64,000 nucleotides of DNA, from assembly GCA_010909165.1 (NCBI GenBank), contig MU008177.1, positions 62,001 to 126,000 on the forward strand, read 5' to 3'. The stretch is from Anthoceros angustus (taxonomy: Eukaryota; Plantae; Anthocerotophyta). Positions 1,195 through 48,927 of this stretch are shown one piece after another (positions within the stretch are counted from its first letter, which is position 1; each line of letters starts with the position of its first letter). Position numbers and translations under genes: made by a program. The notes beneath the pieces are model-generated. The model was not told where the DNA came from and searched no databases. It saw nothing but the letters and a program-made list of their open reading frames with translations.

Positions 1195-1200
1195 AAGGCT

Positions 1201-1460: not shown

Positions 1461-2517
1461 GTGGAGCAGAAGGAGCCACCAACCACCAAATCGTAACCAT
1501 CTCTTAGAGGGCCCACGACAAGGGCCCACCACGAGACAAGAGAGATGGGAGGAGGACTTGGTGGTGACCTGTCGCCGTCCGTAGCTCACCGACAGAGTCC
1601 CGGGAGGTAGGGGCCCGCCTCGCGGATCATCCGATTGGGTGCAGCTTGTCGTGGCTAGGGCTTAGCCGCCAAGGCGGAATCAGAGCAACCCCCACCACCG
1701 ACGGCGAGATAGGCGGAATAAGGAAATAGTAGGCGGCCGATGGGGCGCACCAGCCGCCATCACCTGTAATAGGTGTAATAAAGACGCCGACCTTGGGCGA
1801 GTATAAGAGGGCCGAGGTCGCCTAGTAAAGTATCTTTCTTGGTGTTGATGCGCTTTCTCGCAGCCCTTGTGCGCTTCTGCTAACGTGAGTCCCGAGTCAT
1901 CGAAAGGTGCCCTGGGAGATCGATCAAGGTCCCGTGACGGACCCCAACGTGTGGTGGTGTGTGAAGAGCGATCAAGGACCCTTGCTCGCCCGAGCACCTC
2001 CGGAGGAGGCGGAGGAGGCGGAGGAGGTCCGGACCCGGGAGGTGTAGAGCCGGACGAGAAGCCCGGCAGAGCGACGAGGAGGTCCGACCGCAGCCACCCG
2101 CGATTTTCTCCAAGGACGATGAGTGTAGTGTGAATGGTGAGAGGAACGGACTAGAGGAACAAGTGACAAACTTGAATGATACAGACGCGAACGGGTCCTT
2201 AAACGTTTGGCCACGCGCCCGTCCTAACGCTTGAGTGCAGGTAGTTAGTCATAAAACGATGAATGTGTGTGTTGAGTCTGAAACGGGTACTACGTGAGGT
2301 GAGAAACAATTGAAACATGGCAAACGGAGCCTATCATTCTCTAGGAAACGGAACCCCTTACTACAACGACACGGGATTGTGCGCACCCGGCTGACCGTCA
2401 GCGAAAGTCGCGCCACAACCATCTTCACATACATACATCCAGGCTCCAACACTTTTCAACCTCAACTTCCAATCTCTGAATAAAGGTTAGGATTCCCCTA
2501 GCATATACGCAGACTAT

Positions 2518-2711
2518 CACTACTAGAAAAGGGGTGGTATTGTCACAGCTTATATCACGGTTTATGCAGCCTATTATGACGGTGCTACGCATCTTGTCAC
2601 ACTTTTGGTATAATGGTGGAGGAATGGTAACCAAACCTCTTGGTGTTGCAATCGCTTATTACGGAACTACGTGAATGCGTGTCACGAACTATGACCGTAT
2701 GAGTGTGACAA
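2518..2711 (+). mobile_element. CACTA (En/Spm) transposon terminus: TIR plus subterminal repeats, repeated in all 19 units
   Basis: CACTACTAGAAAA matches the CACTA TIR pattern. It is followed by TTGTCACA(C) at 2540 and 2594, GTGTCACG at 2679, inverted GTGTGACAA at 2703, and a TAT(C/G/T)ACGG/TATGACCG series, as expected for CACTA subterminal arrays. No opposite TIR (TTTTCTAGTAGTG) or transposase seen. Confidence 0.75.
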
Positions 2712-3307
2712 TTGAAGAATTATAACACTTTGTGTGCACGGGCCCGGGCGACATCGGACTCCATAACCATGGTTAACAATGCCTTTCAATTTTCCATTGT
2801 GGCTCAGAGAGACAATCTTGTGCTAGCCAGCTTGGATCTTTGGAACAAGTATTGTATTTTGTTTTTATGAATGCATGAGAGCACCCGCCAAAGAAAACAA
2901 AAATCAACGATGATGTTTGCAAAGGAATGAAAAAAGCCAACAATGATGTCCCTAAAGGAGTACTCAATCTAAGAAGAAAAGAAAAGGTGATGTATAGGTG
3001 TTATAGGTATTCCTAATCCTATCATTTTATTCAGTATGAGGAATTTTATACTCAACGCATTTTGTGATCGGCATCAAGTTTCGACCTTACGCTTTATTCT
3101 ATTCTTTTCATATTCATATCATGTCATGTACGTGAAAGAAATTGGGTTTATATTACATCCCTTTTGCCACTCGAGTTTGGATCTTAGTTCTCGAGATAAA
3201 TCCATCATTTAATACTATATATGTGTTTCCTTGGCTACATACTATTCAACTACTTTTTGACTTGAGAAGTAACAACCATCCGGTTTGTTTGTAACTTGAG
3301 TTCAAAG

Positions 3308-3470
3308 ATGACGACCCATACTCATCGCTAGTTTTTATTGCTTTGGCAATGGGTGCCATGATGGTGGATGGCAAGAATTTTGTTGAGCTCCAAGCGCGTG
3401 GGCACTAATAGTCATATTCACTCGGATGTCCAATACACTACGAGCAATACACCAACCTCCACTATCTCGA
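3308..3470 (+). pseudogene. Exon A: orphan signal-peptide exon paralogous to exon 1 of the EG45-like gene (in 16 units plus a terminal remnant)
   Basis: Encodes ...LVFIALAMGAMMVDG-KNFVELQAHVGTNSHIHSDVQYTTSNTPTSTIS, then a GTATGT donor. Aligns with exon 1 of B (FIALTMVVVILGVSG...HVRTFNHIESNVLYS, then GTATGT). ATG frame is ambiguous because of a variable patch and a T-run. Confidence 0.55.
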
Positions 3471-3623
3471 GTATGTATGAGATTTTTATGTTTGATTGTT
3501 GTTGGACAAGTTTTCTTGTTGCAATGTTGACTAAAAGTGGAAGTATATGTGTGAATTCTATAATTTTGTTTTTACATCATTTATCATTTTCTTTTTGATC
3601 TTTTTGAGCCAAGTGATTTCAAA

Positions 3624-4241
3624 ATGGAAAAAAAATCATTCTACTATATACCTTTTATTGCTTTGACAATGGTTGTTGTTATACTAGAGTGAGTGGTCAT
3701 TCAACTCTTGCGGAGGACATGTTAGAACGTTTAACCATATTGAGTCAAATGTGTTATACTCAGACAATATTTCATCTTCTCAAGTATGTACCGGTTGATA
3801 GTAGATCGCTGCATGATATTTTCTTAGAGCACACTTTTGGATAGATATGTGAAATGCATTTTCTCTGAATTAGGAAATAATTTTGACAAGTAAGAACTTA
3901 GTTTATCTATGTGGAATGCAGTGAGTTGTTTCCTCAACAACAAGCACAATATCTCAAAGTGGATCCCGCTTGACAAATAACAAGTGGAGTTTGGGCGAGG
4001 GGAGCAATGATTTGTGGGATAGTGGGAAGAATTGTGATGTAACCTTCGCTATGTGCATCGATATCGACACCATCACATGTAAGAGAGCACCAATAGATAT
4101 TCCTATTGCGTATCTATTAGTAGTAGGGGATCCGGCATTCCTTTTCAAGGAGAAGGAGTAGTGCTCGCAAGATGCATGGCAAGTCGTGTTTGGCGATCTG
4201 TGACTACAACAATTCACCTAGATCCATGTATATCCAGATAA
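3624..4241 (+). CDS. Gene B copy 1: secreted EG45-like / DPBB (expansin-related) protein, two exons
   Basis: Cross-copy consensus: MEKKSFYYIPFIALTMVVVILGVSG-HSTLRGGHVRTFNHIESNVLYS... | intron GTATGT 3784 to TGCAG 3921 | SCFLNNKHNISVDPxGQITSGVWAVGSNDLWDSGKNCDVTFAMC...IDTITCKRAPIDIPIADLLVVGDPGIPFQGEGVVLSQDAWQVVFGDxDYNNSPRSMYIQQ*. Motifs parallel EG45-like proteins (SEGLWDNGAAC, CK..TIDVKVVD, LSxDAF). Frameshifted as assembled. Confidence 0.6.
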
Positions 4242-6198
4242 TTTCATGGAGCTGGTAGCAACGCTTAGTAGCATGTGCATAAAGGATGGAATGTTTTCCT
4301 CATTGTAGTCACGTTGTTTTAAAATTTTACCAAAAAGCTTATGCTCCTTGTCTTGATAAAACCAAGAATATGGAGACTTTACGAAGAAAAGGAGATGGAA
4401 ATCCCATTTGCCCCGAGAAAAAGGAGGAAAGACCAAGCCAAGGGGACTAACCCTCACGACCGCTCATCTCGAAACTAACTACATACATGAAGAATTTCGT
4501 GGTTAGAGATATGAGAAGGCCTACCTACCAGGTAAGAGGCGCCGCATCCCGATTGCCGTCCTATACACGCCGTTACAGCGCCCTCTATATGGCGATGGAC
4601 ACCGTTTCCCAAGAAAGCCACAAGACAAGAAAAGGGGAGATCAACCCCATTATTCTTGCGATTGTGGTAAGCCTTGCACAGTCAAGGTGAAGTGGAAGGT
4701 TGCTGCTGGAGGCGGGCCCTGGGCAATGGAGGTAGGGATGTGGAGCCCTGCCCTGTGTGCCGTGGCTTGGGGCCATGAGGCCCCATCATGGTCCGAAGGT
4801 GGTTGCTATCCACGGAGAGTTAGCACACGCTTGTGGTATGAAACTTCCTTGTGGTTGCAATGTGCACAAACCGCAAATGACGGCGACCACCGACTTGTGG
4901 AATGCGGATGCGGATGAATGTTCCTGCTCTTGTCCCCTCGGCTCTGTTCACATGGAGTCGGCCGGACCTGACCCTCACACATCATCTACTACGGCTTGTG
5001 CCAAGCACCATCTTCACATACATAAATCCGTGCTCCAACACTTTTCAACCTCAACTTCCAATCTCTAAATAAAGGTTAGGATTCCCCTAGCATATACGCA
5101 GACTATCACTACTAGAAAAGGGGTGGTATTGTCACGCTTATATCACGGTTTATGCATTTATTATGACGGTGCTACGCATCTTGTCACACTTTTATATAAT
5201 GGTGGAGGAATGGTAACCAACCTCTTGGTGTTACCTTGCTTATTACGGAACTACGTGAATGCGTGTCACGAACTATGACCGTATGAGTGTGACAATTGAA
5301 GAATTATAACACTTTGTGTGCACGGGCCCGGGCGACATCGACTCCATAACCATGGTTAACAATGCCTTTCAATTTTCCATTGTGGCTCGGGAGACAATCT
5401 TGTGCTAGCCAAGCCTGATCGGAACAAGTATTGTATTTTGTTTTTATGAATGCATGAGAGCACCCGCCAAAGAAAACAAAAATCAACGATGATGTTTGCA
5501 AAGGAATGAAAAAAGCCAACAATGATGTCCCTAAAGGAGTACTCAATCTAAGAAGAAAAGAAAAGGTGATGTATAGGTGTTATAGGTATTCTAATCCTAT
5601 CATTTTATTCAGATGAGGAATTGCGTTTATACTCAACGATTTTGTGATCGGCATCAAGTTTCGACCTTACGCTTTTATTCTATTCTTTTCATATTCATAT
5701 CATGTCATGTACGTGTGAAAGAAATTGGGTTTATATTACATCCCTTTTGCTTGTCGAGTTTGGATCTTAGTTCTAGATAAATCCATCATTTAATACTATA
5801 TATGTGTTTTGGCTACATACTATTCAACTACTTTTTGGACTTGAGAAGTAACAACCATCCGTTTGTTTGTAACTTGAGTTCAAAGATGACGACCATACTC
5901 TCGCTAGTTTTTATTGCTTTGGCAATGGGTGCCATGATGGTGGATGGCAAGAATTTTGTTGAGCTCCAAGCGCGCGTGGGCACTAATAGTCATATTCACT
6001 CGGATGTCCAATACACTACGAGCAATACACCAACCTCCACTATCTCGAGTATGTATGATTTTTATGTTTGATTGTTGTTGGACAAGTTTTCTTGTTGCAA
6101 TGTTGACTAAAAGTGGAAGTATATGTGTGAATTCTATAATTTTGTTTTTACATCATTTTATCATTTTCTTTTGATCTTTTGAGCCAAGTGATTTCAAA

Positions 6199-6824
6199 AT
6201 GGAAAAAAAAATCATTCTACTATATACCTTTTATTGCTTTGACAATGGTTGTTGTTATACTAGGAGTGAGTGGTCATTCAACTCTTCGCGGAGGACATGT
6301 TAGAACGCTTAACCATATTGAGTCAAATGTGTTATACTCTACAATACGTTTCTTCTCTCAAGTATGTACCCGGGTTGATAGTAGATCGCTGCATGATATT
6401 TTTCTTAGAGCACACTTTGGATAGATATGTGAAATGCATTTTCTTCCGTGAATTAGGAAATAATTTTTGACAAGTAAGAACTTAGTTTATCTATGTGGGT
6501 CAGTGTGAGTTGTTTCCTCAACAACAAGCACAATATCTCGGTGGATCCTACGGACAAATAACAAGTGGAGTTTGGGCGAGGGAGCAATGATTTGTGGGAT
6601 AGTGGGAAGAATTGTGATGTAACCTTCGCTATGTGCGATCCCGATATCGACACCATCACATGTAAGAGAGCACCAATAGATATTCCTATTGCGGATCTAT
6701 TAGTAGTAGGGGATCCGGCATTCCTTTTCAAGGAGAAGGAGTAGTGCTCGCAAGATGCATGGTGTCGTGTTTGGCGATTCGAGACTACAACAATTCACCT
6801 AGATCCATGTATATCCAGCAGTAA
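6199..6824 (+). CDS. Gene B copy 2 (EG45-like DPBB), frameshifted as assembled
   Basis: Same ATG, donor, acceptor region and stop context as copy 1. Confidence 0.55.
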
Positions 6825-8793
6825 TTTCATGGAGCTGGTAGCAACGCTAGTAGCATGTGCATAAAGGATGGAATGTTTCCTCATTGTAGTCACGTTGTTT
6901 TAAAATTTTTACCAAAAGCTTATGCTCCTTGTCTTGATAAAACCAAGAATATGGAGACTTCTGAAAGAAAAGGAGATGGGAAATCCCATTTGCCCCGAGA
7001 AAAGGAGGAAAGACCAAGCCAAGGGGGACTAACCCTCACGACCGCTCATCTCGAAACTAACTACATACAGCGCGAAGAATTTCGTGGTTAGAGATATGAG
7101 AAGGCCTACCTACCACAGGGGCCGAAGGCGCCGCATCCCCAGTGCTTGCCGCCGTCCTATACACCGCGTTCGCCAACGCCCTCTATATGGCGATGGACAC
7201 CCGTTTCCCGAAGAAAGCCACAGTACAAGAAAGGGGGAGATCAACCCCATTATTCTTGCGATTGTGGTAAGCCTTGGCACAGTCAAGGTGAAGTGGAAGG
7301 TTGCTGCTGGGCGGGCCTGGGCAATGGAGGTAGGGATGGAGCCCCGCCGTGGCTTGGGGCCATGAGGCCCCATCATGGTCCAAGGTGGTTGCTATCCACG
7401 GAGAGTTAGCACACGCTTGTGGTATGAAACTTCCTTGTGGTTGCAATGTGCACAAACCGCAAATGACGACCACCGACTTGTGGAATGCGGATGCAGGATG
7501 AATGTTCCGGGCTCTTGTCCCTCGGCTCTCCCATTTACATGGAGAGTCTTGGCCGGACACGACCTCACATCATCTACTACGGCTTGTGCCAAGCACCATC
7601 TTCACATACATAAATCCAGGCTCCAACACTTTTCAACCTCAACTTCCAATCTCTAAATAAAGGTTAGGATTCCCCTAGCATATCGCAGACTATCACTACT
7701 AGAAAAGGGGTGGTATTGTCACACTTATATCACGGTTTATGCAGCCTATTATGACGGTGCTACGATCTTGTCACACTTTTGGTATAATGGTGGAGGAATG
7801 GTAACCAAACCTCTTGGTGTTGCAATCGCTTATTACGGAACTACGTGAATGCGTGTCACGAACTATGACCGTATGAGTGTGACAATTGAAGAATTATAAC
7901 ACTTTGTGTGCACGGGCCCGGGCCCGACATCGACTCCATAACCATGGTTAACAATGCCTTTCAATTTTCCATTGTGGCTCGGAGAGACAATCTTGTGCTA
8001 GCCGTGCTTCGGATCGGAACAAGTATTGTATTTTGTTTTTATGAATGCATGAGAGCACCCGCCAAAGAAAACAAAAATCAACGATGATGTTTGCAAAGGA
8101 ATGAAAAAGCCAACAATGATGTCCCTAAAGGAGTACTCAATCTAAGAAGAAAAGAAAAGGTGATGTATAGGTGTTATAGGTATTCCTATCATTTTATTCA
8201 GATGAGGAATTGCGTTTATACTCAACGCATTTTGTGATCGGCATCAAGTTTCACCTTACGCTTTTATTCTATTCTTTTCATATTCATATCATGTCATGTA
8301 TGCGTGTGAAAGAAATTGGGTTTATATTACATCCCTTTTGCCTTTTAGTTTGGATCTTAGTTCTAGATAAATCCATCATTTAATACTATATATGTGTTTC
8401 CTTGGCTACATACTATTCAACTACTTTTGGACTTGAGAAGTAACAACCATCCGTTTGTTTGTAACTTGAGTTCAAAGATGACGACCCATACTCTCGCTAG
8501 TTTTTATTGCTTTGGCAATGGGTGCCATGATGGTGGATGGCAAGAATTTTGTTGAGCTCCAAGCGCACGTGGGCACTAATAGTCATATTCACTCGGATGT
8601 CCAATACACTACGAGCAATACACCAACCTCCACTATCTCGAGTATGTATGAGATTTTTATGTTTGATTGTTGTTGGACAAGTTTTCTTGTTGCAATGTTG
8701 ACTAAAAGTGGAAGTATATGTGTGAATTCTATAATTTTGTTTTTTACATCATTTATCATTTTCTTTTGATCTTTTGAGCCAAGTGATTTCAAA

Positions 8794-11990: not shown

Positions 11991-12110
11991 TTTCATGGAG
12001 CTGGTAGCAACGCTAGTAGCATGTGCATAAAGGATGGAATGTTTTCCTCATTGTAGTCACGTTGCTTTAAAATTTTACCAAAAAGCTTATGCTCCTTGTC
12101 TTGATAAAAC

Positions 12111-13267
12111 CAAGAATACTGTTCATCTTCTCTCAAGTATGTACCGGGTTGATAGTAGATCGCTACCGCATGATATTTTTCTTAGAGCACACTTTGGATA
12201 GATATGTGAAATGCATTTTCTTCGTGAATTAGGAAATAATTTTGACAAGTAAGAACTTAGTTTATCTATGTGGAATGCAGAGTTGTTTCCTCAACAACAA
12301 GCACAATATCTCGGATCCCGCTGGACAAATAACAAGTGGAGTTTGGGCGAGGGAGCAATGATTTGTGGGATAGTGGGAAGAATTGTGATGTAACCTTCCC
12401 GATCTGACACCATCACATGTAAGAGAGCACCAATAGATATTCCTATTGCATCTATTAGTAGGGGATCCCGGCATTCCTTTTCAAGGAGAAGGAGTAGTGC
12501 TCGCAAGATGCATAAAGTGTGTTTGGCGATTACACAACAATTCACCTAGATCCATGTATATCCAGCAGTAATTTCATGGAGCTGCAACGCTAGTAGCATG
12601 TGCATAAAGGATGGAATGTTTTCCTCATTGTAGTCACGTTGCTTTAAAATTTTACCAAAAAGCTTATGCTCCTTGTCTTGATAAAACCAAAGAATACTGT
12701 TCATCTTCTCTCAAGTATGTACCGGGTTGATAGTAGATCGCTACCGCATGATATTTTTCTTAGAGCACACTTTGGATAGATATGTGAAATGCATTTTCTT
12801 CGTGAATTAGGAAATAATTTTGACAAGTAAGAACTTAGTTTATCTATGTGGAATGCAGAGTTGTTTCCTCAACAACAAGCACAATATCTCGGATCCCGCT
12901 GGACAAATAACAAGTGGAGTTTGGAAGAGGGAGCAATGATTTGTGGGATAGTGGGAAGAATTGTGATGTAACCTTCCCGATCTGACACCATCACATGTAA
13001 GAGAGCACCAATAGATATTCCTATTGCATCTATTAGTAGGGGATCCCGGCATTCCTTTTCAAGGAGAAGGAGTAGTGCTCGCAAGATGCATGGCAAGTGT
13101 GTTTGGCGATTACACAACAATTCACCTAGATCCATGTATATCCAGCAGTAATTTCATGGAGCTGCAACGCTAGTAGCATGTGCATAAAGGATGGAATGTT
13201 TTCCTCATTGTAGTCACGTTGCTTTAAAATTTTACCAAAAAGCTTATGCTCCTTGTCTTGATAAAAC
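12111..13267 (+). pseudogene. Two extra ~578-bp partial copies of gene B (end of exon 1, intron, exon 2)
   Basis: Junctions at CAAGAATA (12111) and CAAAGAATA (12689). No ATG or signal peptide in these copies. Confidence 0.8.
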
Positions 13268-15094
13268 CAAGAATATGGAGACTTTACGAAGAAAAAGGAG
13301 ATGGGAAATCCCATTTGCCCCGAGAAAAAGGAGGAAAGACCAAGCCAAGGGGACTAACCCTCACGACCGCTCATCTCGAAACTAACTACATATTAAGAAT
13401 TTCGTGGTTAGAGATATGAGAAGGCCTACCTACCGAGGGGCCGAACGCGCATCCCGTTGCCTTGCGTCCACCGCTCGCCAACGCCTCTATATGGCGATGG
13501 ACACCTGCTTTCAAGAAAGCCACGACAAGAAAAGGAGATCAACCCCATTATTCTTGCGATTGTGGTAAGCCTTGCACAGTCAAGGTGAAGTGGAAGGTTG
13601 CTGCTGAGGCGGGGGCGGGCTGGGCAATGGAGGTAGGGATGTGGAGCCCCGCCAGCCGTGGCTTGGGGCCATGAGGCCCCATCATGGTCCGGTGGTTGGT
13701 TGCTATCCACGGAGAGTTAGCACACGCTTGTGGTATGAAACTTCCTTGTGGTTGCAATGTGCACAAACCGCAAATGACGACGACCATCGACTTGTGGAAT
13801 GCGGATGCGGATGAATGTTCCTGCTCTTGTCCCTCGGCTCTGCCCCCATTTACATGAGCGGTCTTGTGGGACCACCTGCATCATCACTACGGCAAGCACC
13901 ATCTTCACATACATACATCCAGGCTCCAACACTTTTCAACCTCAACTTCCAATCTCTAAATAAAGGTTAGGATTCCCCTAGCATATACGCACTATCACTA
14001 CTAGAAAAAGGGGTGGTATTGTCACACTTATATCACGGTTTATGCAGCCTATTATGACGGTGCTACGATCTTGTCACACTTTTGGTATAATGGTGGAGGA
14101 ATGGTAACCAAACCTCTTGGTGTTGCAGCTATTACGGAACTACGTGAATGCGTGTCACGAACTATGACCGTATGAGTGTGACAATTGAAGAATTATAACA
14201 CTTTGTGTGCACGGGCCCGGCCCGACATCGGACTCCATAACCATGGTTAACAATGCCTTTCAATTTTCCATTGTGGCTCGGAGAGACAATCTTGTGCTAG
14301 CCAGCTCGGATGCCGGAACAAGTATTGTATTTTGTTTTTATGAATGCATGAGAGCACCCGCCAAAGAAAACAAAAATCAACGATGATGTTTGCAAAGGAA
14401 TGAAAAAGCCAACAATGATGTCCCTAAAGGAGTACTCAATCTAAGAAGAAAAGAAAAGGTGATGTATAGGTGTTATAGGTATTCCTAATCCTATCATTTT
14501 ATTCAGATGAGGAATTGCGTTTATACTCAACGCATTTTGTGATCGGCATCAAGTTTCGACCTTACAGCTTTATTCTATTCTTTTCATATTCATATCATGT
14601 CATGTATGAGAAAGAAATTGGGTTTATATTACATCCCTTTGCCACCGTCGAGTTTGGATCTTAGTTCTCGAGATAAATCCATCATTTAATACTATATATG
14701 TGTTTCCTTGGCTACATACTATTCAACTACTTTTGACTTGAAGTAACAACCATCCGTTTGTTTGTAACTTGAGTTCAAAGATGACGACCCATACTCTTGC
14801 TAGTTTTTATTGCTTTGGCAATGGGTGCCATGATGGTGGATGGCAAGAATTTTGTTGAGCTCCAAGCGCACGGGCACTAATAGTCATATTCACCCTGATG
14901 TCCAATACACTACGAGCAATACACCAACCTCCACTATCTCGAGTATGTATGAGATTTTTATGTTTGATTGTTGTTGGACAAGTTTTCTTGTTGCAATGTT
15001 GACTAAAAGTGGAAGTATATGTGTGAATTCTATAATTTTGTTTTTACATCATTTATCATTTTCTTTTTGATCTTTTGAGCCAAGTGATTTCAAA

Positions 15095-24750: not shown

Positions 24751-25367
24751 ATGGAAAAAAAAATCATTCTACTATATACCTTTTATTGCTTTGACAATGG
24801 TTGTTGTTATACTAGGAGTGAGTGGTCATTCAACTCTTCATGGAGGACATGTTAGAACGCTTAACCATATTGAGTCAAATGTGTTATATAAAGACAATGT
24901 TTCATCTTCTCTCAAGTATGTACCGGGTTGATAGTAGATCAGCTGATATTTTCTTAGAGCACACTTTGGATAGATATGTGAAATGCATTTTCTTCGTGAA
25001 TTAGGAAATAATTTTTGACAAGTAAGAACTTAGTTTATCTATGTGGAATGCGGTGAGTTGTTTCCTCAACAACAAGCACAATATCTCGGTGGATCCCGCT
25101 GGACAAATAACAAGTGGAGTTTGGTGAGGGAGCAATGATTTGTGGGATAGTGGGAAGAATTGTGATGTAACCTTCGCTATATGCGATCTTCGACACCATC
25201 ACATGTAAGAGAGCACCAATAGATATTCCTATTGCGGATCTATTAGTAGTAGGGGATCGGCATTCCTTTTCAAGGAGAAGGAGTAGTGCTCGCAAGATGC
25301 ATGGCAAGTGTGTTTGGCGATTCGGGACTACAACAATTCACCTAGATCCATGTATATCCAGCAGTAA
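24751..25367 (+). CDS. Gene B copy 9 (EG45-like DPBB), frameshifted as assembled
   Basis: Same structure as copy 1. Confidence 0.55.
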
Positions 25368-25411
25368 TTTCATGGAGCTGGTATAGCTAAATACGTGCAT
25401 AAAGGATGGAA

Positions 25412-25717
25412 TGTTTTCCTCAACAAACACAATATCTCGGTGGATCCCGCTGGACAAATAACAAGTGGAGTTTGGGCGGTGAGCAATGATTTAATGGGAT
25501 AGTGGGAAGAATTGTGATGTAACCTTCGCTATGTGCATCGATATCGACACCATCACATGTAAGAGAGCACCAATAGATATTCCTATTGCGGATCTATTAG
25601 TAGTAGGGGATCCGGCATTCCTTTTCAAGGAGAAGGAGTAGTGCTCGCAAGATGCATGGCAAGTGTGTTTGGCGATTCGACTACAACAATTCACCTAGAT
25701 CCATGTATATCCAGTAA
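25412..25717 (+). pseudogene. Extra copy of gene B exon 2 (~354-bp tandem duplication)
   Basis: Junction TGTTTTCCTCA at 25412-25422 joins 3' flank back to the exon 2 start. Confidence 0.8.
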
Positions 25718-27637
25718 TTTCATGGAGCTGGTAGCAACGCTAGTAGCATGTGCATAAAGGATGGAATGTTTCCTCATTGTAGTCACGTTGCTTTAAAATT
25801 TTTACCAAAAAGCTTATGCTCCTTGTCTTGATAAAACCAGAACATGGAGACTTTACGAAGAAAAGGAGATGGGAAATCCCATTTGCCCGAAAAAAAAGGA
25901 GGAAAGACCAAGCCAAGGGGACTAACCCTCACGACTCATCTCAAACTAACTACATACAAGAATTTTGGTTAGAGATATGAGAAGGCCTACCTACCACATG
26001 AGGCGCGCATCCCCAGTGCTTGCCGTCCTATACGCGTTCGAACGCCTCTATGGCGATGGACACCCGTTTCAAGAAAGCCACAAAGAAAAGGGGAGATCAA
26101 CCCCATTATTCTTGCGATTGTGGTAAGCCTTACGGGTCAAGGTGAAGTGGAAGGTTGCCGGGCGAGGCGGGCACAGGCAATGGAGGTAGGGATGTGGAGC
26201 CTGCCCCGGGCCGGCAGCCATGAGGCCCCATCATGGTCCAAGGTGGTTGCTATCCACGGAGAGTTAGCACACGCTTGTGGTATGAAACTTCCTTGTGGTT
26301 GCAATGTGCACAAACCGCAAATGACGGCGACCACCGACTTGTGGAATGCGGATGCGGGATGAATGTTCCGGGCTCTTGTCCCTCGGCTCTCCCCCATTTA
26401 CATGGCCAGACCTGACCTCACATCATCTACTACGGCTTGTGCTGCACCATCTTCACATACATACATCCAGCTCCAACACTTTTCAACCTCAACTTCCAAT
26501 CTCTAAATAAAGGTTAGGATTCCCCTAGCATATATGAGACTATCACTACTAGAAAAGGGTGGTATTGTCACCTTATATCACGGTTTATGCAGCCTATTAT
26601 GACGTTACGCATCTTGTCACACTTTTGGTATAATGGTGGAGGAATGGTAACCAAACCTCTTGGTGTTGCGCTTATTACGGAACTACGTGAATGCGTGTCA
26701 CGAACTATATGTATGAGTGTGACAATTGAAGAATTATAACACTTTGTGTGCACGGGCCCGGGCGACCGGACTCCATAACCATGGTTAACAATGCCTTTCA
26801 ATTTTCCATTGTGGCTCGGGAGAGACAATCTTGTGCTTGTGCTTCGGATCTTTGGAACAAGTATTGTATTTTGTTTTATGAATGCATGAGAGCACCCGCC
26901 AAAGAAAACAAAAAATCGCGATGATGTTTGCAAAGGAATGAAAAAGCCAACAATGATGTCCCTAAAGGAGTACTCAATCTAAGAAGAAAAGAAAAGGTGA
27001 TGTATAGGTGTTATAGGTATTCCTAATCCTATCATTTTATTCAGATGAGGAATGCGTTTATACTCAACGCATTTTGTGATCGCATCAAGTTTCGACCTTA
27101 CGGTTTATTCTATTCTTTTCATATTCATATCATGTCATGTATGCGTGTGAAAGAAATTGGGTTTATATTACATCCCTTTTGCCACCGAGTTTGGATCTTA
27201 GTTCTCGAGATAAATCCATCATTTAATACTATATATGTGTTTCCTTGGCTACATACTATTCAACTACTTTTGGACTTGAGAAGTAACAACCATCCGGTTT
27301 GTTTGTAACTTGAGTTCAAAGATGACGACCCATACTCTCGCTAGTTTTTATTGCTTTGGCAATGGGTGCCATGATGGTGGATGGCAAGAATTTTGTTGAG
27401 CTCCAAGCGCACGTGGGCACTAATAGTCATATTCACTCGGATGTCCAATACACTACGAGCAATACACCAACCTCCACTATCTCGAGTATGTATGAGATTT
27501 TTATGTTTGATTGTTGTTGGACAAGTTTTCTTGTTGCAATGTTGACTAAAAGTGGAAGTATATGTGTGAATTCTATAATTTTGTTTTTTACATCATTTAT
27601 CATTTTCTTTTGATCTTTTGAGCCAAGTGATTTCAAA

Positions 27638-36016: not shown

Positions 36017-36169
36017 TTTCATGGAGCTGGTAGCAACGCTAGTAGCATGTGCATAAAGGATGGAATGTTTTCCTCATTGTAGTCACGTTGCTTTAAAATT
36101 TTACCAAAAAGCTTATGCTCCTTGTCTTGATAAAACCAAGAACATGGAGACTTTACGAAAGAAAAGGAG

Positions 36170-38585: not shown

Positions 38586-41500
38586 TTTCATGGAGCTGGT
38601 AGCAACGCTAGTAGCATGTGCATAAAGGATGGAATGTTTCCTCATTGTAGTCACGTTGCTTTAAAATTTTACCAAAAGCTTATGCTCCTTGTCTTGATAA
38701 AACCCGGTAACATGGAGACTTTACGAAAGAAAAGGAGATGGAAATCCCATTTGCCCGAGAAAAGGAGGAAAGACCAAGCCAAGGGGACTAACCCTCACGA
38801 CCGCTCATCTCGAAACTAACTACATCTGACAAGAATTTCGTGGTTAGAGATATGAGAAGGCCTACCTACCATAGAAGGCGCGCATCCCGGTGCTTGCCGT
38901 CCTATACACGCGTTATCGCGCCCTCTATATGGCGATGGACACCGTTTCGAAAGCCACAAGACAAGAAAAGGAGATCAACCCCATTATTCTTGCGATTGTG
39001 GTAAGCCTTGCAGTCAAGGTGAAGTGGAAGGTTCTTCTTTGGGCGGGCGGGCTGGGCAATGGAGGTAGGGATGTGGAGCCTGCCCGAGGTGTGGCTTGGG
39101 GCCATGAGGCCCCATCATGGTCGAAGGTGGTTGCTATCCACGGAGAGTTAGCACACGCTTGTGGTATGAAACTTCCTTGTGGTTGCAATGTGCACAACCG
39201 CAAATGACGACCAACGACTTGTGGAATGCGGATGCGGATGAATGTTCCGGGCTCTTGTCCCTCGGCTCTACCCCATTTACATGGAGTCTTGGCCGGACCT
39301 GACCTCACATCATCTACTACGGCTTGTGCCAAGCACCATCTTCACATACATACATCCAGGCTCCAACACTTTTCAACCTCAACTTCCAATCTCTAAATAA
39401 AGGTTAGGATTCCCCTAGCATATCTGGACTATCACTACTAGAAAAGGGGTGGTATTGTCACGACTTATATCACGGTTTATGCAGCCTATTATGATTTCGC
39501 ATCTTGTCACACTTTTGGTATAATGGTGGAGGAATGGTAACCAACCTCTTGGTGTTGCCGCTTATTACGGAACTACGTGAATGCGTGTCACGAACTATGG
39601 CCGTATGAGTGTGACAATTGAAGAATTATAACACTTTGTGTGCACGGGCCCGGGCGACCTTTGGACTCCATAACCATGGTTAACAATGCCTTTCAATTTT
39701 CCATTGTGGCTCGGAGAGACAATCTTGTGCTAGCAGCCGGATCGGAACAAGTATTGTATTTTATTTTTATGAATGCATGAGAGCACCCGCCAAAGAAAAC
39801 AAAAATCAACGATGATGTTTGCAAAGGAATGAAAAAGCCAACAATGATGTCCCTAAAGGAGTACTCAATCTAAGAAGAAAGAAAAGGAGATGGGAAATCC
39901 CATTTGCCCGAGAAAAGGAGGAAAGACCAAGCCAAGGGGACTAACCTCACGACCGCTCATCTCGAAACTAACTACATACAAGAATTTCGTGGTTAGAGAT
40001 ATGAGAAGGCCTACCTACCAGGGGCAAGACGCCATCCCGGCTTGCCGTCCCCATACGGCCAACGCCTCTATATGATGGACACCCGCTTCTCAAGAAAGCC
40101 ACGACAAGAAAAGGAGATCAACCCCATTATTCTTGCGATTGTGGTAAGCCTTGCACAGTCAAGGTGAAGTGGAAGGTTGCCGGAGGCGGGCGGGCCTGGG
40201 CAATGGAGGTAGGGATGTGGAGCCCCGCCGTGGCTTGGGGCCATGAGGCCCCATCATGGTCAAGGTGGTTGCTATCCACGGAGAGTTAGCACACGCTTGT
40301 GGTATGAAACTTCCTTGTGGTTGCAATGTGCACAAATGACGACGACCATCGACTTGTGGAATGCGGATGCGGATGAATGTTCCGGGCTCTTGTCCCTCGG
40401 CTCTCTGCCCCCATTTACATGAGCGTGGCACGACGACCTCACATCATCTACTACGGCTTGTGCCAAGCACCATCTTCACATACATACATCCAGGCTCCAA
40501 CACTTTTCAACCTCAACTTCCAATCTCTAAATAAAGGTTAGGATTCCCCTAGCATATATGGACTATCACTACTAGAAAAAGGGGTGGTATTGTCACGCCT
40601 TATATCACGGTTTATGCAGCCTATTATGCGCGATCTTGTCACACTTTTGGTATAATGGTGGAGGAATGGTAACCAACCTCTTGGTGTTGCAATCGCTTAT
40701 TACGGAACTACGTGAATGCGTGTCACGAACTATGACCGTATGAGTGTGACAATTGAAGAATTATAACACTTTGTGTGCACGGGCCCGGGCCCCGAAATCG
40801 GACTCCATAACCATGGTTAACAATGCCTTTCAATTTTCCATTGTGGCTCAGAGACAATCTTGTGCTAGCCAGCTTGGATGCGGAACAAGTATTGTATTTT
40901 GTTTTTATGAATGCATGAGAGCACCCGCCAAAGAAAACAAAAATCAACGATGATGTTTGCAAAGGAATGAAAAAGCCAACAATGATGTCCCTAAAGGAGT
41001 ACTCAATCTAAGAAGAAAAGAAAAGGTGATGTATAGGTGTTATAGGTATTCCTAATCCTATCATTTTATTCAGATGAGGAATTGCGTTTATACTCAACGC
41101 ATTTTGTGATCGGCATCAAGTTTCGACCTTACGGTTTTATTCTATTCTTTTCATATTCATATCATGTCATATGCGTGTGAAAGAAATTGGGTTTATATTA
41201 CATCCCTTTTGCCCTTTATCGAGTTTGGATCTTAGTTCTCGAGATAAATCCATCATTTAATACTATATATGTGTTTCCTTGGCTACATACTATTCAACTA
41301 CTTTTGGACTTGAGAAGTAACAACCATCCGGTTTGTTTGTAACTTGAGTTCAAAGATGACGACCCATACTCTCGCTAGTTTTTATTGCTTTGGCAATGGG
41401 TGCCATGATGGTGGATGGCAAGAATTTTGTTGAGCTCCAAGCGCGTGGGCACTAATAGTCATATTCACTCGGATGTCCAATACACTACGAGCAATACACC

Positions 41501-41669
41501 AACCTCCACTATCTCGAGTATGTATGAGATTTTTATGTTTGATTGTTGTTGGACAAGTTTTCTTGTTGCAATGTTGACTAAAAGTGGAAGTATATGTGTG
41601 AATTCTATAATTTTGTTTTTACATCATTTATCATTTTCTTTTTGATCTTTTGAGCCAAGTGATTTCAAA

Positions 41670-42297
41670 ATGGAAAAAAAAATCATTCTACTATATACCT
41701 TTTATTGCTTTGACAATGGTTGTTGTTATACTAGGGTGAGTGGTCATTCAACTCTTGCGGAGGACATGTTAGAACGTTTAACCATATTGAGTCAAATGTG
41801 TTATACTCAAGAATGATACGTTCATCTTCTCTCAAGTATGTACCGGGTTGATAGTAGATCGCTTGCATGATATTTTCTTAGAGCACACTTTGGATAGATA
41901 TGTGAAATGCATTTTCTTACGTGAATTAGGAAATAATTTTTGACAAGTAAGAACTTAGTTTATCTATGTGGAATGCGAGTTGTTTCCTCAACAACAAGCA
42001 CAATATCTCGGTGGATCCCTGGACAAATAACAAGTGGAGTTTGGGCGGTAGGGAGCAATGATTTGTGGGATAGTGGGAAGAATTGTGATGTAACCTTCGC
42101 TATGCGATCCACGATATCGACACCATCACATGTAAGAGAGCACCAATAGATATTCCTATTGCGGATCTATTAGTAGTAGGGGATCCGGCATTCCTTTTCA
42201 AGGAGAAGGAGTAGTGCTCTCGCAAGATGCATGGCAAGTCGTGTTTGGCGATTGAGACTACAACAATTCACCTAGATCCATGTATATCCAGCAGTAA
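41670..42297 (+). CDS. Gene B copy 15 (EG45-like DPBB), frameshifted as assembled
   Basis: Same structure as copy 1. Confidence 0.55.
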
Positions 42298-44249: not shown

Positions 44250-44871
44250 ATGGAAAAAAAATCATTCTACTATATACCTTTTTATTGCTTTGACAATGGT
44301 TGTTGTTATACTAGGGTGAGTGGTCATTCAACTCTTCGCGGAGGACATGTTAGAACGCGTTTAACCATATTGAGTCAAATGTGTTATACTCAGAATACTG
44401 CTTTCATCTTCTCTCAAGTATGTACCGGGTTGATAGTAGATCGCTACTGCATGATATTTTCTTAGAGCACACTTTGGATAGATATGTGAAATGCATTTTC
44501 TTCGTGAATTAGGAAATAATTTTGACAAGTAAGAACTTAGTTTATCTATGTGGAATGCGAGTTGTTTCCTCAACAACAAGCACAATATCTCGGTGGATCC
44601 CGCTGGACAAATAACAAGTGGAGTTTGGGCGGTAGGGAGCAATGATTTGTGGGATAGTGGGAAGAATTGTGATGTAACCTTCGCTATGCCGATATCGACA
44701 CCATCACATGTAAGAGAGCACCAATAGATATTCCTATTGCGGATCTATTAGTAGTAGGGGATCCGCATTCCTTTTCAAGGAGAAGGAGTAGTGCTCTCGC
44801 AAGATGCATGGCAAGTCGTGTTTGGCGATTGAGACTACAACAATTCACCTAGATCCATGTATATCCAGTAA
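44250..44871 (+). CDS. Gene B copy 16 (EG45-like DPBB), frameshifted as assembled
   Basis: Same structure as copy 1. Confidence 0.55.
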
Positions 44872-46814
44872 TTTCATGGAGCTGGTAGCAACGCTAGTAG
44901 CATGTGCATAAAGGATGGAATGTTTTCCTCATTGTAGTCACGTTGCTTTAAAATTTTACCAAAAAGCTTATGCTCCTTGTCTTGATAAAACCGAACATGG
45001 AGACTTTACGAAGAAAAGGAGATGGGAAATCCCATTTGCCCCGAGAAAAAGGAGGAAAGACCAAGCCAAGGGGACTAACCCTCACGACCGCTCATCTCGA
45101 AACTAACTACATACAGAAGAATTTCGTGGTTAGAGATATGAGAAGGCCTACCTACCAGGGCCGACGCATCCCGATGCTTGCCGCCGTCCTATACACTGCG
45201 TTCAACGCCTCTATATGGCGATGGACACCGTTTCAAGAAAGCCACAGACAAGAAAAGGGAGATCAACCCCATTATTCTTGCGATTGTGGTAAGCCTTGGC
45301 ACAGTCAAGGTGAAGTGGAAGGTTGCTGCTGGGCGGGCGGGCAATGGAGGTAGGGATGTGGAGCCCCGCCGTGGCTTGGGGCCATGAGGCCCCATCATGG
45401 TCCGGTGGTTGCTATCCACGGAGAGTTAGCACACGCTTGTGGTATGAAACTTCCTTGTGGTTGCAATGTGCACAAACCGCAAATGACGACGACCACGACT
45501 TGTGGAATGCGGATGCGGGATGAATGTTCCGGGCTCTTGTCCCTCGGCTCTGCCCCCATTTACATGAGGTCTTGGCCGGACCTGACCTCACATCATCTAC
45601 TACGGCTTGTGCCAAGCACCATCTTCACATACATAAATCCAGCTCCAACACTTTTCAACCTCAACTTCCAATCTCTAAATAAAGGTTAGGATTCCCCTAG
45701 CATATCGCAGACTATCACTACTAGAAAAAGGGGTGGTATTGTCACACTTATATCACGGTTTATGCAGCCTATTATGACGGTGCTACGCATCTTGTCACAC
45801 TTTTGGTATAATGGTGGAGGAATGGTAACCAAACCTCTTGGTGTTGCGCTTATTACGGAACTACGTGAATGCGTGTCACGAACTATGACCGTATGAGTGT
45901 GACAATTGAAGAATTATAACACTTTGTGTGCACGGGCCCGGGCCCGACCGACTCCATAACCATGGTTAACAATGCCTTTCAATTTTCCATTGTGGCTCGG
46001 AGAGACAATCTTGTGCTAGCCAGCTCGGATCGGAACAAGTATTGTATTTTGTTTTTATGAATGCATGAGAGCACCCGCCAAAGAAAACAAAAATCAACGA
46101 TGATGTTTGCAAAGGAATGAAAAAGCCAACAATGATGTCCCTAAAGGAGTACTCAATCTAAGAAGAAAAGAAAAGGTGATGTATAGGTGTTATAGGTATT
46201 CCTAATCCTATCATTTTATTCAGATGAGGAATTGCGTTTATACTCAACGCATTTTGTGATCGGCATCAAGTTTCGACCTTACGCTTTATTCTATTCTTTT
46301 CATATTCATATCATGTCATGTATGCGTGTGAAAGAAATTGGGTTTATATTACATCCCTTTGCCATCGAGTTTGGATCTTAGTTCTAGATAAATCCATCAT
46401 TTAATACTATATATGTGTTTCCTTGGCTACATACTATTCAACTACTTTTGGACTTGAGAAGTAACAACCATCCGTTTGTTTGTAACTTGAGTTCAAAGAT
46501 GACGACCCATACTCTCGCTAGTTTTTATTGCTTTGGCAATGGGTGCCATGATGGTGGATGGCAAGAATTTTGTTGAGCTCCAAGCGCACGTGGGCACTAA
46601 TAGTCATATTCACTCGGATGTCCAATACACTACGAGCAATACACCAACCTCCACTATCTCGAGTATGTATGAGATTTTTATGTTTGATTGTTGTTGGACA
46701 AGTTTTCTTGTTGCAATGTTGACTAAAAGTGGAAGTATATGTGTGAATTCTATAATTTTGTTTTTACATCATTTATCATTTTCTTTTTGATCTTTTGAGC
46801 CAAGTGATTTCAAA

Positions 46815-47435
46815 ATGGAAAAAAAATCATTCTACTATATACCTTTTATTGCTTTGACAATGGTTGTTGTTATACTAGGAGTGAGTGGTCATTCAACTCT
46901 TCGGAGGACATGTTAGAACGTTTAACCATATTGAGTCAAATGTGTTATACTCGGCGTAATACGTTTCATCTTCTCTCAAGTATGTACCGGGTTGATAGTA
47001 GATCATGTTGCATGATATTTTTCTTAGAGCACACTTTGGATAGATATGTGAAATGCATTTTCTTACGTGAATTAGGAAATAATTTTGACAAGTAAGAACT
47101 TAGTTTATCTATGTGGAATGCAGGCGTAGTTGTTTCCTCAACAACAAGCACAATATCTCGGTGGATCCTGGACAAATAACAAGTGGAGTTTGGGCGGTAG
47201 GGAGCAATGATTTGTGGGATAGTGGGAAGAATTGTGATGTAACCTTCGCTATGCGGTGATATCGACACCATCACATGTAAGAGAGCACCAATAGATATTC
47301 CTATTGCGGATCTATTAGTAGTAGGATCCCATTCCTTTTCAAGGAGAAGGAGTAGTGCTCTATAAGATGCATGGCAAGTCGTGTTTGGCGATTCGAGACT
47401 ACAACAATTCACCTAGATCCATGTATATCCAGTAA
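46815..47435 (+). CDS. Gene B copy 17 (EG45-like DPBB), frameshifted as assembled
   Basis: Same structure as copy 1. Confidence 0.55.
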
Positions 47436-48819
47436 TTTCATGGAGCTGGTAGCAACGCTAGTAGCATGTGCATAAAGGATGGAATGTTTCCTCATTGTAG
47501 TCACGTTGCTTTAAAATTTTTACCAAAAAGCTTATGCTCCTTGTCTTGATAAAACCAGTAACATGGAGACTTTACGAAAGAAAAGGAGATGGGAAATCCC
47601 ATTTGCCCCAAGAAAAAAAGGAGGAAAGACCAAGCCAAGGGGGACTAACCCTCACGACCGCTCATCTCGAAACTAACTACATACAGCGCGAAGAATTTCG
47701 TGGTTAGAGATATGAGAAGGCCTACCTACCACAGGGACGCGCATCCCAGTGCTTGCCGTCCTATACACGCGTTCGCGCCTCTATATGGCGATGGACACCC
47801 GTTTCAAGAAAGCCACAGACAAGAAAGGGAGATCAACCCCATTATTCTTGCGATTGTGGTAAGCCTTGGCACAGTCAAGGTGAAGTGGAAGGTTGCTGCG
47901 GAGGCGGGGGGCTGGGCAATGGAGGTAGGGATGTGGAGCCCCGCCGTGGCTTGGGGCCATGAGGCCCCATCATGGTCCGAAGGTGGTTGCTATCCACGGA
48001 GAGTTAGCACACGCTTGTGGTATGAAACTTCCTTGTGGTTGCAATGTGCACAAAGCGCAAATGGCGACCAGCGACTTGTGGAATGCGGATGCGGGATGAA
48101 TGTTCCGGGCTCTTGTCCCTCGGCTCTGCCCCCATTTACATGAGCCGGTCTTGGGACACACCTCACATCATCTACTACGGCTTGTGCCAAGCACCATCTT
48201 CACATACATACATCCAGCTCCAACACTTTTCAACCTCAACTTCCAATCTCTAAATAAAGGTTAGGATTCCCCTAGCATATACGCAGACTATCACTACTAG
48301 AAAGGGTGGTATTGTCACACTTATATCACAGTTTATGCAGCCTATTATGGCGGTGCTACGCATCTTGTCACACTTTTGGTATAATGGTGGAGGAATGGTA
48401 ACCAACCTCTTGGTGTTGCAATCGCTTATTACGAACTACGTGAATGCGTGTCACGAACTATGACCGTATGAGTGTGACAATTGAAGAATTATAACACTTT
48501 GTGTGCACGGGCCCGACCTGGACTCCATAACCATGGTTAACAATGCCTTTCAATTTTCCATTGTGGCTCAGAGAGACAATCTTGCTAGCTTACGGATCTT
48601 TGGAACAAGTATTGTATTTTGTTTTTATGAATGCATGAGAGCACCCGCCAAAGAAAACAAAAATCAACGATGATGTTTGCAAAGGAATGAAAAAAGCCAA
48701 CAATGATGTCCCTAAAGGAGTACTCAATCTAAGAAGAAAAGAAAAGGTGATGTATAGGTGTTATAGGTATTCCTAATCCTATCATTTTATTCGTATGAGG
48801 AATTGCGTATGAGGAATTG

Positions 48820-48927
48820 CAAGAATTTTGTTGAACTCCAAGCGCACGTGGGCAGTAATAGTCATATTCACTCGGATGTCCAATACACTACGAGCAATAC
48901 ACCAACCTCCACTATCTCGAGTATGTA
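48820..48927 (+). pseudogene. Terminal, slightly diverged remnant of exon A
   Basis: KNFVELQAHVGSNSHIHSDVQY...TIS followed by GTATGTA. Carries gaActcc and ggcaGtaat, where array copies read gaGctc and gcaCtaat. Confidence 0.75.

What the first reader, a model, noticed from the sequence alone, without database searches (positions are those of the whole stretch)
2418..48927. 46-kb tandem array in which a secreted EG45-like/DPBB gene is amplified together with one CACTA transposon end
Seen: 19 CACTA ends and 17 near-complete copies of a two-exon, signal-peptide gene hidden by frameshifts, at ~2.58-kb period. Known: Pack-CACTA elements capture host exons and CACTA ends can seed tandem arrays; EG45-like/PNP proteins are apoplastic DPBB proteins that usually occur in small families. 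Inference: transposon-linked mass amplification of a divergent apoplastic protein gene, either as a dosage module (defence, symbiosis or wall biology) or as a silenced satellite. An ORF-only annotation would miss it entirely.
Basis: partly seen in the sequence, partly recalled or inferred. Interest (0 to 1): 0.82.

Follow-up and report, generated by a model that had tools for sequence, protein, structure and literature searches.

The report
Methylated CACTA-end tandem array, orphan gene
A plant (liverwort-like) genome holds about 18 head-to-tail copies of a 2.58-kb unit that joins one transposon end to a small secreted-protein gene of unknown family; the array is real, the "DPBB/EG45" label has no tool support, and most of the frameshifts look like sequencing errors at methylated cytosines.

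Summary
Window 2418-48927 is a head-to-tail array with a 2.56-2.61-kb period. It has 19 CACTACTAGAAA termini, 16 full and 1 partial exon-1 copies, 17 copies of a duplicated exon 1, and 20 exon-2 copies.

The CACTA end is credible. It matches the En/Spm terminus at 12 of 13 bases, and four TTGTCACAC subterminal motifs lie in the first 190 bp and nowhere else in the unit.

The gene looks like a real coding family. A diverged inverted paralog at 53711-53950 is alike only from the exon-2 acceptor to the stop codon, and changes there favour third codon positions (dN/dS about 0.11).

The DPBB/EG45 identity found no support in Pfam, PDB profiles, three word searches or one exhaustive search of 1.84 billion proteins. 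I call it an orphan.

The "decay" is suspect:
- Small indels are as frequent as substitutions.
- Changes hit CG and CHG cytosines about five times more often than CHH or A/T.
- About half of the CG/CHG-bearing 12-bp windows carry five or more alleles.
- Columns away from these contexts differ by only 0.69%.

My best reading is a young, CG/CHG-methylated, probably silent array whose frameshifts are largely long-read consensus errors.

Earlier follow-ups on this genome reported the same error pattern in other tandem gene arrays (PLATZ-, TFIIB- and ELF1-like), on other DNA. This family was not among them.

The parts
2418..48927 (+). Head-to-tail array: 99 bp of a unit tail, 18 units (four with large internal rearrangements), and a last partial unit that ends at the exon-1 donor site
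5107..7693 (+). Representative unit (U2, 2587 bp)
5107..5300 (+). CACTA-type 5' terminus CACTACTAGAAAA. Four TTGTCACAC-type subterminal motifs (three direct, one inverted) lie within 190 bp and nowhere else in the unit
5889..6052 (+). Exon 1: ATG, a signal-peptide-like hydrophobic core and about 30 further codons, ending at a GTATGT donor. A TATATATG box lies about 90 bp upstream
   Evidence: signal peptide judged by inspection only
6195..6365 (+). Exon 1b: diverged tandem duplicate of exon 1, 320 bp downstream, with its own ATG, hydrophobic core and GTATGT donor
   Evidence: (D1)
6503..6824 (+). Exon 2 (about 105 codons in the frame supported by the paralog), from the acceptor region to the TAA after ...MYIQQ. 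It is broken at about 10 CG/CHG hot spots in every copy
6830..7693 (+). G+C-rich unit tail (up to 57% GC, 12-14 CpG per 200 bp). No Pfam match. It holds a second, degenerate end-like motif CA[CAG][GT]ACAAGAAA[AG] at 7221-7233
12115..13991 (+). Unit 4 structural variant: unit positions about 1237-1845 (exon-2 region) present three times
25059..25776 (+). Unit 9 structural variant: 355-bp internal tandem duplication over exon 2
53711..53950 (-). Diverged inverted paralog of exon 2 (74-78% DNA identity in two blocks, about 41 codons shorter, with stops or shifts)

Best explanation
A 2.58-kb segment was amplified head to tail to about 18 copies. Each unit holds the 5' end of a CACTA (En/Spm-type) element with its subterminal motifs. 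About 780 bp inside that end lies a small gene: a signal peptide, a duplicated first exon and one large second exon. The likely mechanism is an initial duplication followed by unequal sister-chromatid exchange or replication slippage (inferred). The gene belongs to a lineage-restricted family with no detectable relatives. Comparison with a diverged paralog 5 kb away shows that the family evolved as coding sequence. The copies are young or homogenised, differing by about 0.7% outside error-prone contexts. The array is most likely methylated at CG and CHG and transcriptionally silent (inferred). Most small indels and clustered changes that break the reading frames are consensus errors of long-read (nanopore-type) sequencing at methylated cytosines and homopolymers, left uncorrected because short reads cannot be placed in a repeat (inferred). 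Whether any copy is intact cannot be read from this assembly.
For: Array and counts.
CACTA end: 12 of 13 bases match the En/Spm terminus (the reference terminus is from my own knowledge). Four subterminal motifs lie in the first 190 bp and none in the other 2.39 kb.
Coding history: paralog homology starts about 12 nt before the exon-2 acceptor and ends 3 nt after the stop. Over 30 codons, 22 differences fall 5/4/13 by codon position, giving dN 0.155 and dS 1.46.
Error signature:
- 891 indel events against 906 substitutions.
- Rates are 7-8 times higher within 2 nt of CG/CHG.
- Change per cell is 16.0% at CG and 17.2% at CHG, against 3.5% at CHH and 3.4% at A/T.
- At consensus CG cells, 212 indels against 71 deamination-type changes.
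- 52% of CG/CHG-bearing 12-bp windows have 5 or more alleles, while 57% of the other windows are invariant.
- Hot-column distances between units are flat at 11-26% (mostly 11-20%), with no neighbour effect.
- Cold columns differ by 0.69%.
Reads: the only DNA run holding the stretch contains 23% of its 31-mers. Its contigs lie only on the CG-poor part of the unit. They differ from the window at homopolymers and CG sites.
Copy number: contig depth scales with the number of units sharing each word, mostly 8-11 per copy with one value at 4.3.
Literature and earlier notes: methylation-related nanopore errors are documented (PMC12506013, PMC12392509). Earlier follow-ups saw the same pattern elsewhere in this genome; these are leads and do not count as independent evidence.
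Against: The sequencing platform of the assembly and of run X1 is not on record, so 'nanopore error' is inferred from the error spectrum alone. Some hot-spot alleles are shared by runs of neighbouring units (for example an extra G in units 11-18). Two recent internal duplicates in unit 4 share nearly all of their hot-spot alleles. Allele-specific 31-mers of unit 17 are present in X1. Part of the hot-spot variation is therefore real or systematic. Methylation was not measured. No RNA data of known kind were available, so silence is unproven. The consensus still carries an in-frame TAG in one candidate frame.
Confidence: 0.6

Rival explanations
1. One reading: the amplified gene is a divergent EG45-like/PNP double-psi beta-barrel protein, amplified as a dosage module for wall, defence or symbiosis functions.
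For: By eye only (my memory of PNP-A and barwin, not a tool result)...LGVGSNDLWDSGKNC...C... and ...GVVLSQDAWQVVFGD...Y... resemble the 'LW-NG-AC' and 'DLS-DAF--I' motifs of DPBB proteins. The size, signal peptide and four cysteines fit. In the paralog, the length from MWDAGSSC to the stop is close to that of small DPBB proteins.
Against: No PF03330 match, or any other significant Pfam match, on 13 stop-free pieces at E up to 10. No PDB match with profiles of either half. No relative in three word searches or in the exhaustive profile search, whose two hits were spurious repeat proteins. The motif-bearing stretch lies in a segment of about 41 codons that the paralog lacks and that looks like an internal duplication. 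No transcript evidence.
Confidence: 0.25
2. The frameshifts are real. The array is an older dead satellite of pseudogenes in which methylated CG/CHG sites are true mutation hot spots.
For: Some hot-spot alleles are shared by adjacent units and by recent internal duplicates. Contig depth in X1 tracks the window's allele multiplicities. Hot and cold distance matrices correlate weakly (Mantel r 0.41, p 0.026).
Against: Deamination produces transitions, yet indels outnumber TG/CA changes 3 to 1 at CG cells. Changes spread to flanking bases, and up to 18 alleles occur per 12-bp window. The distances are star-like with no neighbour effect. 77% of the stretch's 31-mers are absent from the only DNA run. 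Cold columns differ by only 0.69%.
Confidence: 0.2
3. Assembly expansion: only 1-3 real copies were inflated by the assembler.
For: Error-rich repeat regions are where assemblers fail. No read spans the array in the data available.
Against: Four units carry distinct large rearrangements. Shared substitutions at cold columns distinguish units. Contig depth of about 120-170 for words present in 14-17 units, against 6.8-32 for rarer alleles, fits about 15-20 copies at 8-11 per copy. The single-copy depth itself was not measured.
Confidence: 0.05
4. The protein's C-terminal half is a beta-gamma-crystallin / inhibitor-I36-type Greek-key motif rather than a DPBB.
For: Language-model feature search of the 41-residue C-part: 27 of the 60 hits are clusters carrying PF00030/PF03995, best score 0.91. 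By eye the F-x-G ... [WY]-N-[DN]-x-x-x-S-x-x-[IV] pattern fits.
Against: Recognition was 2230, below the tool's 2300 mark, and shared features were 139-159, below 170. No Crystall or I36 hit in Pfam or PDB. The phenylalanine and glutamine of F-Q-G are not kept in the paralog.
Confidence: 0.08
5. There is no gene: the 'exons' are non-coding internal transposon sequence that happens to contain ORF pieces.
For: No homolog anywhere, no intact copy, no transcript, and AF2 pLDDT 37.7 on the best piece.
Against: Paralog conservation is confined to acceptor-to-stop, with third-position bias and a shared stop codon. Exon 1 is duplicated with ATG, hydrophobic core and GT donor all kept. A contig from another locus carries a closely related exon-1 start in an open frame.
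Confidence: 0.15

Closest known systems
Tandem repeats and satellites derived from CACTA elements (e.g. the major Chenopodium satellite from the CACTA-like element Jozin, PMC7320549; CACTA structural diversity, PMC8978399)
   Same: Part of a CACTA element serves as, or lies within, the monomer of a head-to-tail array.
   Different: The monomer here is 2.58 kb, far longer than classic 40-400-bp satellites. It contains the element's terminus with its subterminal motifs plus a whole small gene. Only about 18 copies are seen at one locus.
Pack-type gene capture by DNA transposons (Pack-MULE, Pack-CACTA; from my own knowledge)
   Same: A non-transposase, host-like gene segment lies just inside a CACTA end and points inward.
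   Different: No second end, target-site duplication or donor locus was found. The nearby paralog is only 74-78% identical and is not the donor. Amplification was tandem, not by transposition.
Gene-bearing macrosatellites and young tandem gene arrays reported by this scan elsewhere in the same genome (PLATZ-like 5.2 kb, TFIIB-like 2.55 kb, ELF1-like 2.56 kb; notes s1-278028, s1-270530, s1-262041)
   Same: Kilobase-scale units, each with a very divergent small gene, near-identical copies, frame breaks at methylated sites and no transcript found. Two of them have almost the same period as this array.
   Different: The cargo gene differs. A transposon end in the unit is shown only here.
EG45-like / PNP / expansin domain-1 proteins (Pfam PF03330 DPBB_1)
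   Same: Small secreted cysteine-containing protein. Two short motifs look alike by eye.
   Different: No statistical similarity in any search, and the fold was not obtainable.

Membership tests
DPBB_1 / EG45-like (PF03330) | Significant match to the family HMM | tested here: not met
   13 stop-free pieces covering exon 1, exon 1b, both halves of exon 2 and the paralog gave no DPBB hit at E up to 10. The pieces are short (31-95 aa), so sensitivity is limited.
DPBB_1 / EG45-like (PF03330) | Detectable homology to any known expansin, PNP, barwin or kiwellin protein or structure | tested here: not met
   PDB profile searches, word searches and the exhaustive search of 1.84 billion representatives found no true relative.
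DPBB_1 / EG45-like (PF03330) | Double-psi beta-barrel fold | tested here: inconclusive
   The AF2 model of the longest stop-free piece has mean pLDDT 37.7 and is unusable. A full-length in-frame sequence cannot be taken from the window.
CACTA (En/Spm, CMC) transposon | CACTA... terminal sequence | tested here: met
   CACTACTAGAAAA starts every unit. It matches the maize En/Spm terminus at 12 of 13 bases (reference from my own knowledge). 30 sites against 2.25 expected.
CACTA (En/Spm, CMC) transposon | Subterminal short repeats in direct and inverted orientation near the end | tested here: met
   TTGTCACAC-type motif at unit positions 22, 75 and 158 (direct) and 183 (inverted), and none in the remaining 2.39 kb.
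CACTA (En/Spm, CMC) transposon | Inverted partner terminus and 3-bp target-site duplication | tested here: not met
   No minus-strand match to the terminus with up to 2 mismatches anywhere in the 64 kb. Without a complete element a target-site duplication cannot be assessed.
CACTA (En/Spm, CMC) transposon | Transposase (TnpD/TnpA-type) gene | tested here: not met
   No transposase family in the unit ORFs or flank ORFs. This is expected for a non-autonomous fragment.
Tandem repeat / macrosatellite | Head-to-tail units of constant period, with copy number supported by reads | tested here: inconclusive
   The structure is met. Read support comes only from short contigs whose depth scales with unit multiplicity. 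There was no spanning read and no single-copy calibration.
Beta-gamma-crystallin / inhibitor I36 | Match to PF00030 or PF03995 | tested here: not met
   Only a sub-threshold language-model lead. No match in Pfam or PDB.

The most novel reading that the evidence does not exclude
This genome repeatedly builds 2.5-2.6-kb gene-bearing tandem arrays: this one plus the TFIIB-like and ELF1-like arrays noted by the scan. They might share one amplification mechanism tied to a CACTA end, in which the terminus acts as a recurrent initiation or recombination point and carries different small genes into methylated macrosatellites. In that case the orphan secreted-protein gene here would be intact in most copies once sequencing errors are removed.
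Probability: 0.12. Interest if true: 0.7.

Novelty: new member of a known kind. Interest (0 to 1): 0.4.

Why it matters
This is a clean example of a transposon end and a lineage-specific secreted-protein gene co-amplified as one kilobase-scale tandem unit in an early-diverging land plant. If other arrays of nearly the same period in this genome share the same end, it would point to a common amplification route. It also carries a practical warning. In this assembly, repeat copies look decayed because errors pile up at CG and CHG, the two maintenance-methylation contexts. Pseudogene calls, repeat ages and dN/dS values taken from such regions would be wrong. The same error pattern can be read as an indirect methylation map.

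Tried and rejected
- Pfam on 13 gene pieces and 16 other ORFs of the unit and flanks: only SpoU_methylase and Choline_transpo in the right-hand single-copy genes.
- Rfam on the window: nothing.
- Word searches with the exon-2 N-part, a C-part alignment and exon 1: nothing.
- Exhaustive profile search: two spurious DPWANSKWSVGQ-repeat proteins.
- PDB profiles: chance hits only, to ribosomal L42 and a designed trefoil.
- Atlas feature search: phage hypothetical proteins for the 86-aa piece, nothing for the 54-aa piece, and a weak crystallin/I36 lead for the C-part.
- AF2 on the best piece: pLDDT 37.7, so no fold search was run.
- One composite profile of the whole domain: failed, because MAFFT stacked the C-part pieces onto the N-part and no copy bridges them in a single frame.
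- RNA evidence: the one possible RNA run laid nothing.
- Copy number against a single-copy region: not obtainable within 6 kb of the array edge and a single read-laying run.
- Scan-note look-ups by sequence: blank.
Full report
**Observation.** I aligned unit U2 (5107-7693) against the window by BLAST. It tiles 2418-48927 head to tail on the + strand. The exact word CACTACTAGAAA occurs 19 times, mostly 2562-2608 bp apart. Four spacings differ because of structural variants:
- Unit 4 (3729 bp) carries unit positions about 1237-1845 three times.
- Unit 7 (1875 bp) lacks positions 340-1033.
- Unit 9 (2902 bp) has a 355-bp internal duplication, which Tandem Repeats Finder also reported.
- Unit 15 (1134 bp) lacks positions 466-1856.

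The En/Spm-type 13-mer matches 30 sites with up to 2 mismatches, all on the + strand and all in the array, against 2.25 expected. Exon 1 is present 16 times in full and once in part. A duplicated exon 1b is present 17 times, and the exon-2 region 20 times. The array starts at unit phase 2489 and ends at phase 949, which is exactly the exon-1 donor site. It therefore has no transposon-like outer boundaries.

**Unit anatomy.**
- Positions 1-190 hold the terminus CACTACTAGAAAA. It matches the maize En/Spm terminus at 12 of 13 bases; the reference terminus is from my own knowledge.
- The same stretch holds four copies of a TTGTCACAC-type motif, three direct and one inverted. The motif is absent from the other 2.39 kb. 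This is the usual layout of a CACTA subterminal region.
- No inverted partner end exists in the 64 kb, and no transposase was found.
- A TATATATG box lies at consensus position 696, and exon 1 begins with ATG at 788. Exon 1 encodes a hydrophobic N-terminus that looks like a signal peptide by inspection, and it ends at a GTATGT donor near 951.
- A diverged duplicate of exon 1 sits 320 bp downstream, with its own ATG, hydrophobic core and donor.
- Exon 2 runs from about 1408 to a TAA at 1724-1726.
- The last 860 bp are G+C-rich, have no Pfam match, and contain a second, degenerate end-like motif near position 2100.

**Is it a gene?** A diverged inverted paralog lies at 53711-53950. Its DNA similarity to the unit (74-78%) is confined to consensus 1394-1469 and 1635-1729. 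That span starts about 12 nt before the exon-2 acceptor and ends 3 nt after the stop codon. The intron and the 3' flank have diverged beyond recognition.

In the frame that ends ...MYIQQ-stop in both loci, 30 comparable codons differ at 22 bases, distributed 5/4/13 by codon position. This gives dN 0.155, dS 1.46 and a ratio of 0.11. The sample is small (chi-square p about 0.04), but it points to past purifying selection on this frame.

The paralog lacks about 41 codons that the array copies have. That extra stretch resembles the stretch before it, so it may be an internal duplication. A contig in run X1 matches exon 1 but continues into unrelated upstream sequence, and it has an open start of the same kind. 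Further family members therefore probably exist elsewhere in the genome.

**What protein?** The DPBB/EG45 label rests on two short motifs that also look similar to me by eye. That judgement comes from memory and is not a test. Every tool test was negative:
- Pfam gave no DPBB or other credible hit on 13 stop-free pieces at E up to 10.
- PDB profile searches of both halves gave only chance hits.
- Three word searches of 5.8 billion proteins found nothing.
- The exhaustive profile search of 1.84 billion representatives returned only two spurious repeat proteins.
- AlphaFold on the longest piece gave pLDDT 37.7.
- A language-model search of the C-terminal 41 residues pointed weakly to beta-gamma-crystallin/I36 clusters, below the tool's reliability marks. 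Pfam and PDB did not back this.

I therefore call it an orphan small secreted protein. DPBB remains an untested possibility, at about 25%.

**The frameshifts.** Against the unit consensus there are 891 small indel events and 906 substitutions. That ratio is far from normal sequence divergence. The differences are concentrated in particular contexts:
- The 24% of columns within 2 nt of a CG or CHG hold about 70% of all substitutions, deletions and insertions, a rate ratio of 7-8.
- By cytosine context, the change rate per cell is 16.0% at CG and 17.2% at CHG, against 3.5% at CHH and 3.4% at A/T.
- At consensus CG cells, 212 indels stand against 71 deamination-type TG/CA changes.
- Homopolymers of 4 or more bases are a second, weaker hot context.
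- 52% of CG/CHG-bearing 12-bp windows have five or more alleles among 18 units, while 57% of the other windows are invariant.
- Hot-column distances between units are flat, with no neighbour effect.
- Cold columns, which are 53% of the unit, differ pairwise by only 0.69%.

Deamination of methylcytosine cannot make this spectrum. Consensus errors of nanopore-type reads at methylated bases and homopolymers can, and such errors are documented (PMC12506013, PMC12392509).

The only DNA run that holds the stretch contains just 23% of its 31-mers. Its contigs lie only on the CG-poor part of the unit. They differ from the window at homopolymers and CG sites.

There is evidence on the other side. Some hot-spot alleles are shared by neighbouring units and by the recent duplicates inside unit 4. 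Allele-specific words of unit 17 do occur in the run. The platforms of the assembly and of the run are not on record. I put about 65-70% on most of the small indels being artefacts. Earlier follow-ups on other arrays of this genome reached the same reading; I treat that as agreement and not as independent proof.

**Copy number.** Contigs identical to the window have depths that scale with how many units share their words. The ratio is mostly 8-11 per unit copy, with one value at 4.3, and one rare-allele contig has depth 6.8. Together with four distinct structural variants, this argues against an assembly expansion of 1-3 copies. The single-copy depth was not measured, so the figure is not proven.

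**Mechanism (inferred).** A segment spanning a CACTA 5' end and the adjacent inward-facing gene was first duplicated and then expanded by unequal exchange or slippage. The low divergence at cold columns means the array is recent or continually homogenised. The CG plus CHG specificity of the errors implies maintenance methylation, which would mean a heterochromatic and probably silent block. No RNA contig was laid, but the one candidate RNA run is of uncertain kind. Capture of the gene by the transposon (Pack-CACTA) is possible but unsupported, since no second end, target-site duplication or donor gene was found.

**Verdict.** This is a new member of a known kind: a transposon-linked, gene-bearing tandem array or macrosatellite. 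Its cargo is an orphan gene, and most of its apparent decay is likely technical. The scan has already described sibling arrays in this genome on other DNA, two with almost the same period. The one lead with real upside is whether all of these arrays share the CACTA end.

Noticed in passing
window 53711-53950 (-): Diverged inverted paralog of exon 2, about 41 codons shorter, with an in-frame stop and a frame change. Its similarity stops at the acceptor and at the stop codon. No exon 1 was found next to it.
   Followed up: yes
run X1, contig 6, laid on window 46479-46546: A 129-nt contig (depth 45) matches exon 1 over 72 nt with 4 edits and then runs into 57 nt unlike the window. It carries an open start of the same signal-peptide type and matches no unit in the window, so another family member probably lies elsewhere in the genome.
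   Followed up: partly
window 1-2000: The left flank is 61% G+C with strong A-over-T skew (0.33). It has long overlapping ORFs (e.g. 406-1194, 262 aa, coiled-coil-like) with no Pfam match. Probably a transposon remnant; not identified.
   Followed up: partly
window 48978-49690 (-): The ORFs just right of the array (161 and 105 aa) look like retrotransposon gag by eye but gave no Pfam hit. The array's right end is not at an integer unit phase, so this may be an insertion or a deletion edge.
   Followed up: partly
window 59473-59826 (-) and 61305-63292 (+): Single-copy genes: a SpoU-type RNA methylase exon (E 2e-8) and a choline-transporter-like gene (E 3e-25). They would serve as depth and error-rate controls for the array.
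   Followed up: partly
unit position about 2100, e.g. window 7221-7233, 13521-13533, 40100-40112: A second end-like motif CA[CAG][GT]ACAAGAAA[AG] (followed by GGGG in the consensus) lies about 480 bp before each true terminus, in the same orientation and without subterminal motifs. It may be a remnant of an older terminus.
   Followed up: partly
other pieces of the same genome (notes s1-270530, s1-262041): Two other gene-bearing arrays reported by the scan have periods of 2.55 and 2.56 kb, almost the same as the 2.58 kb here. Whether they share the CACTA end or any sequence could not be checked.
   Followed up: no
P0001, P0002: The only hits of the exhaustive search are proteins made of DPWANSKWSVGQLKMIRGPT repeats, matching the short DPWTNNKWSLG stretch. 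They look like translated repeat DNA and are not relatives.
   Followed up: yes
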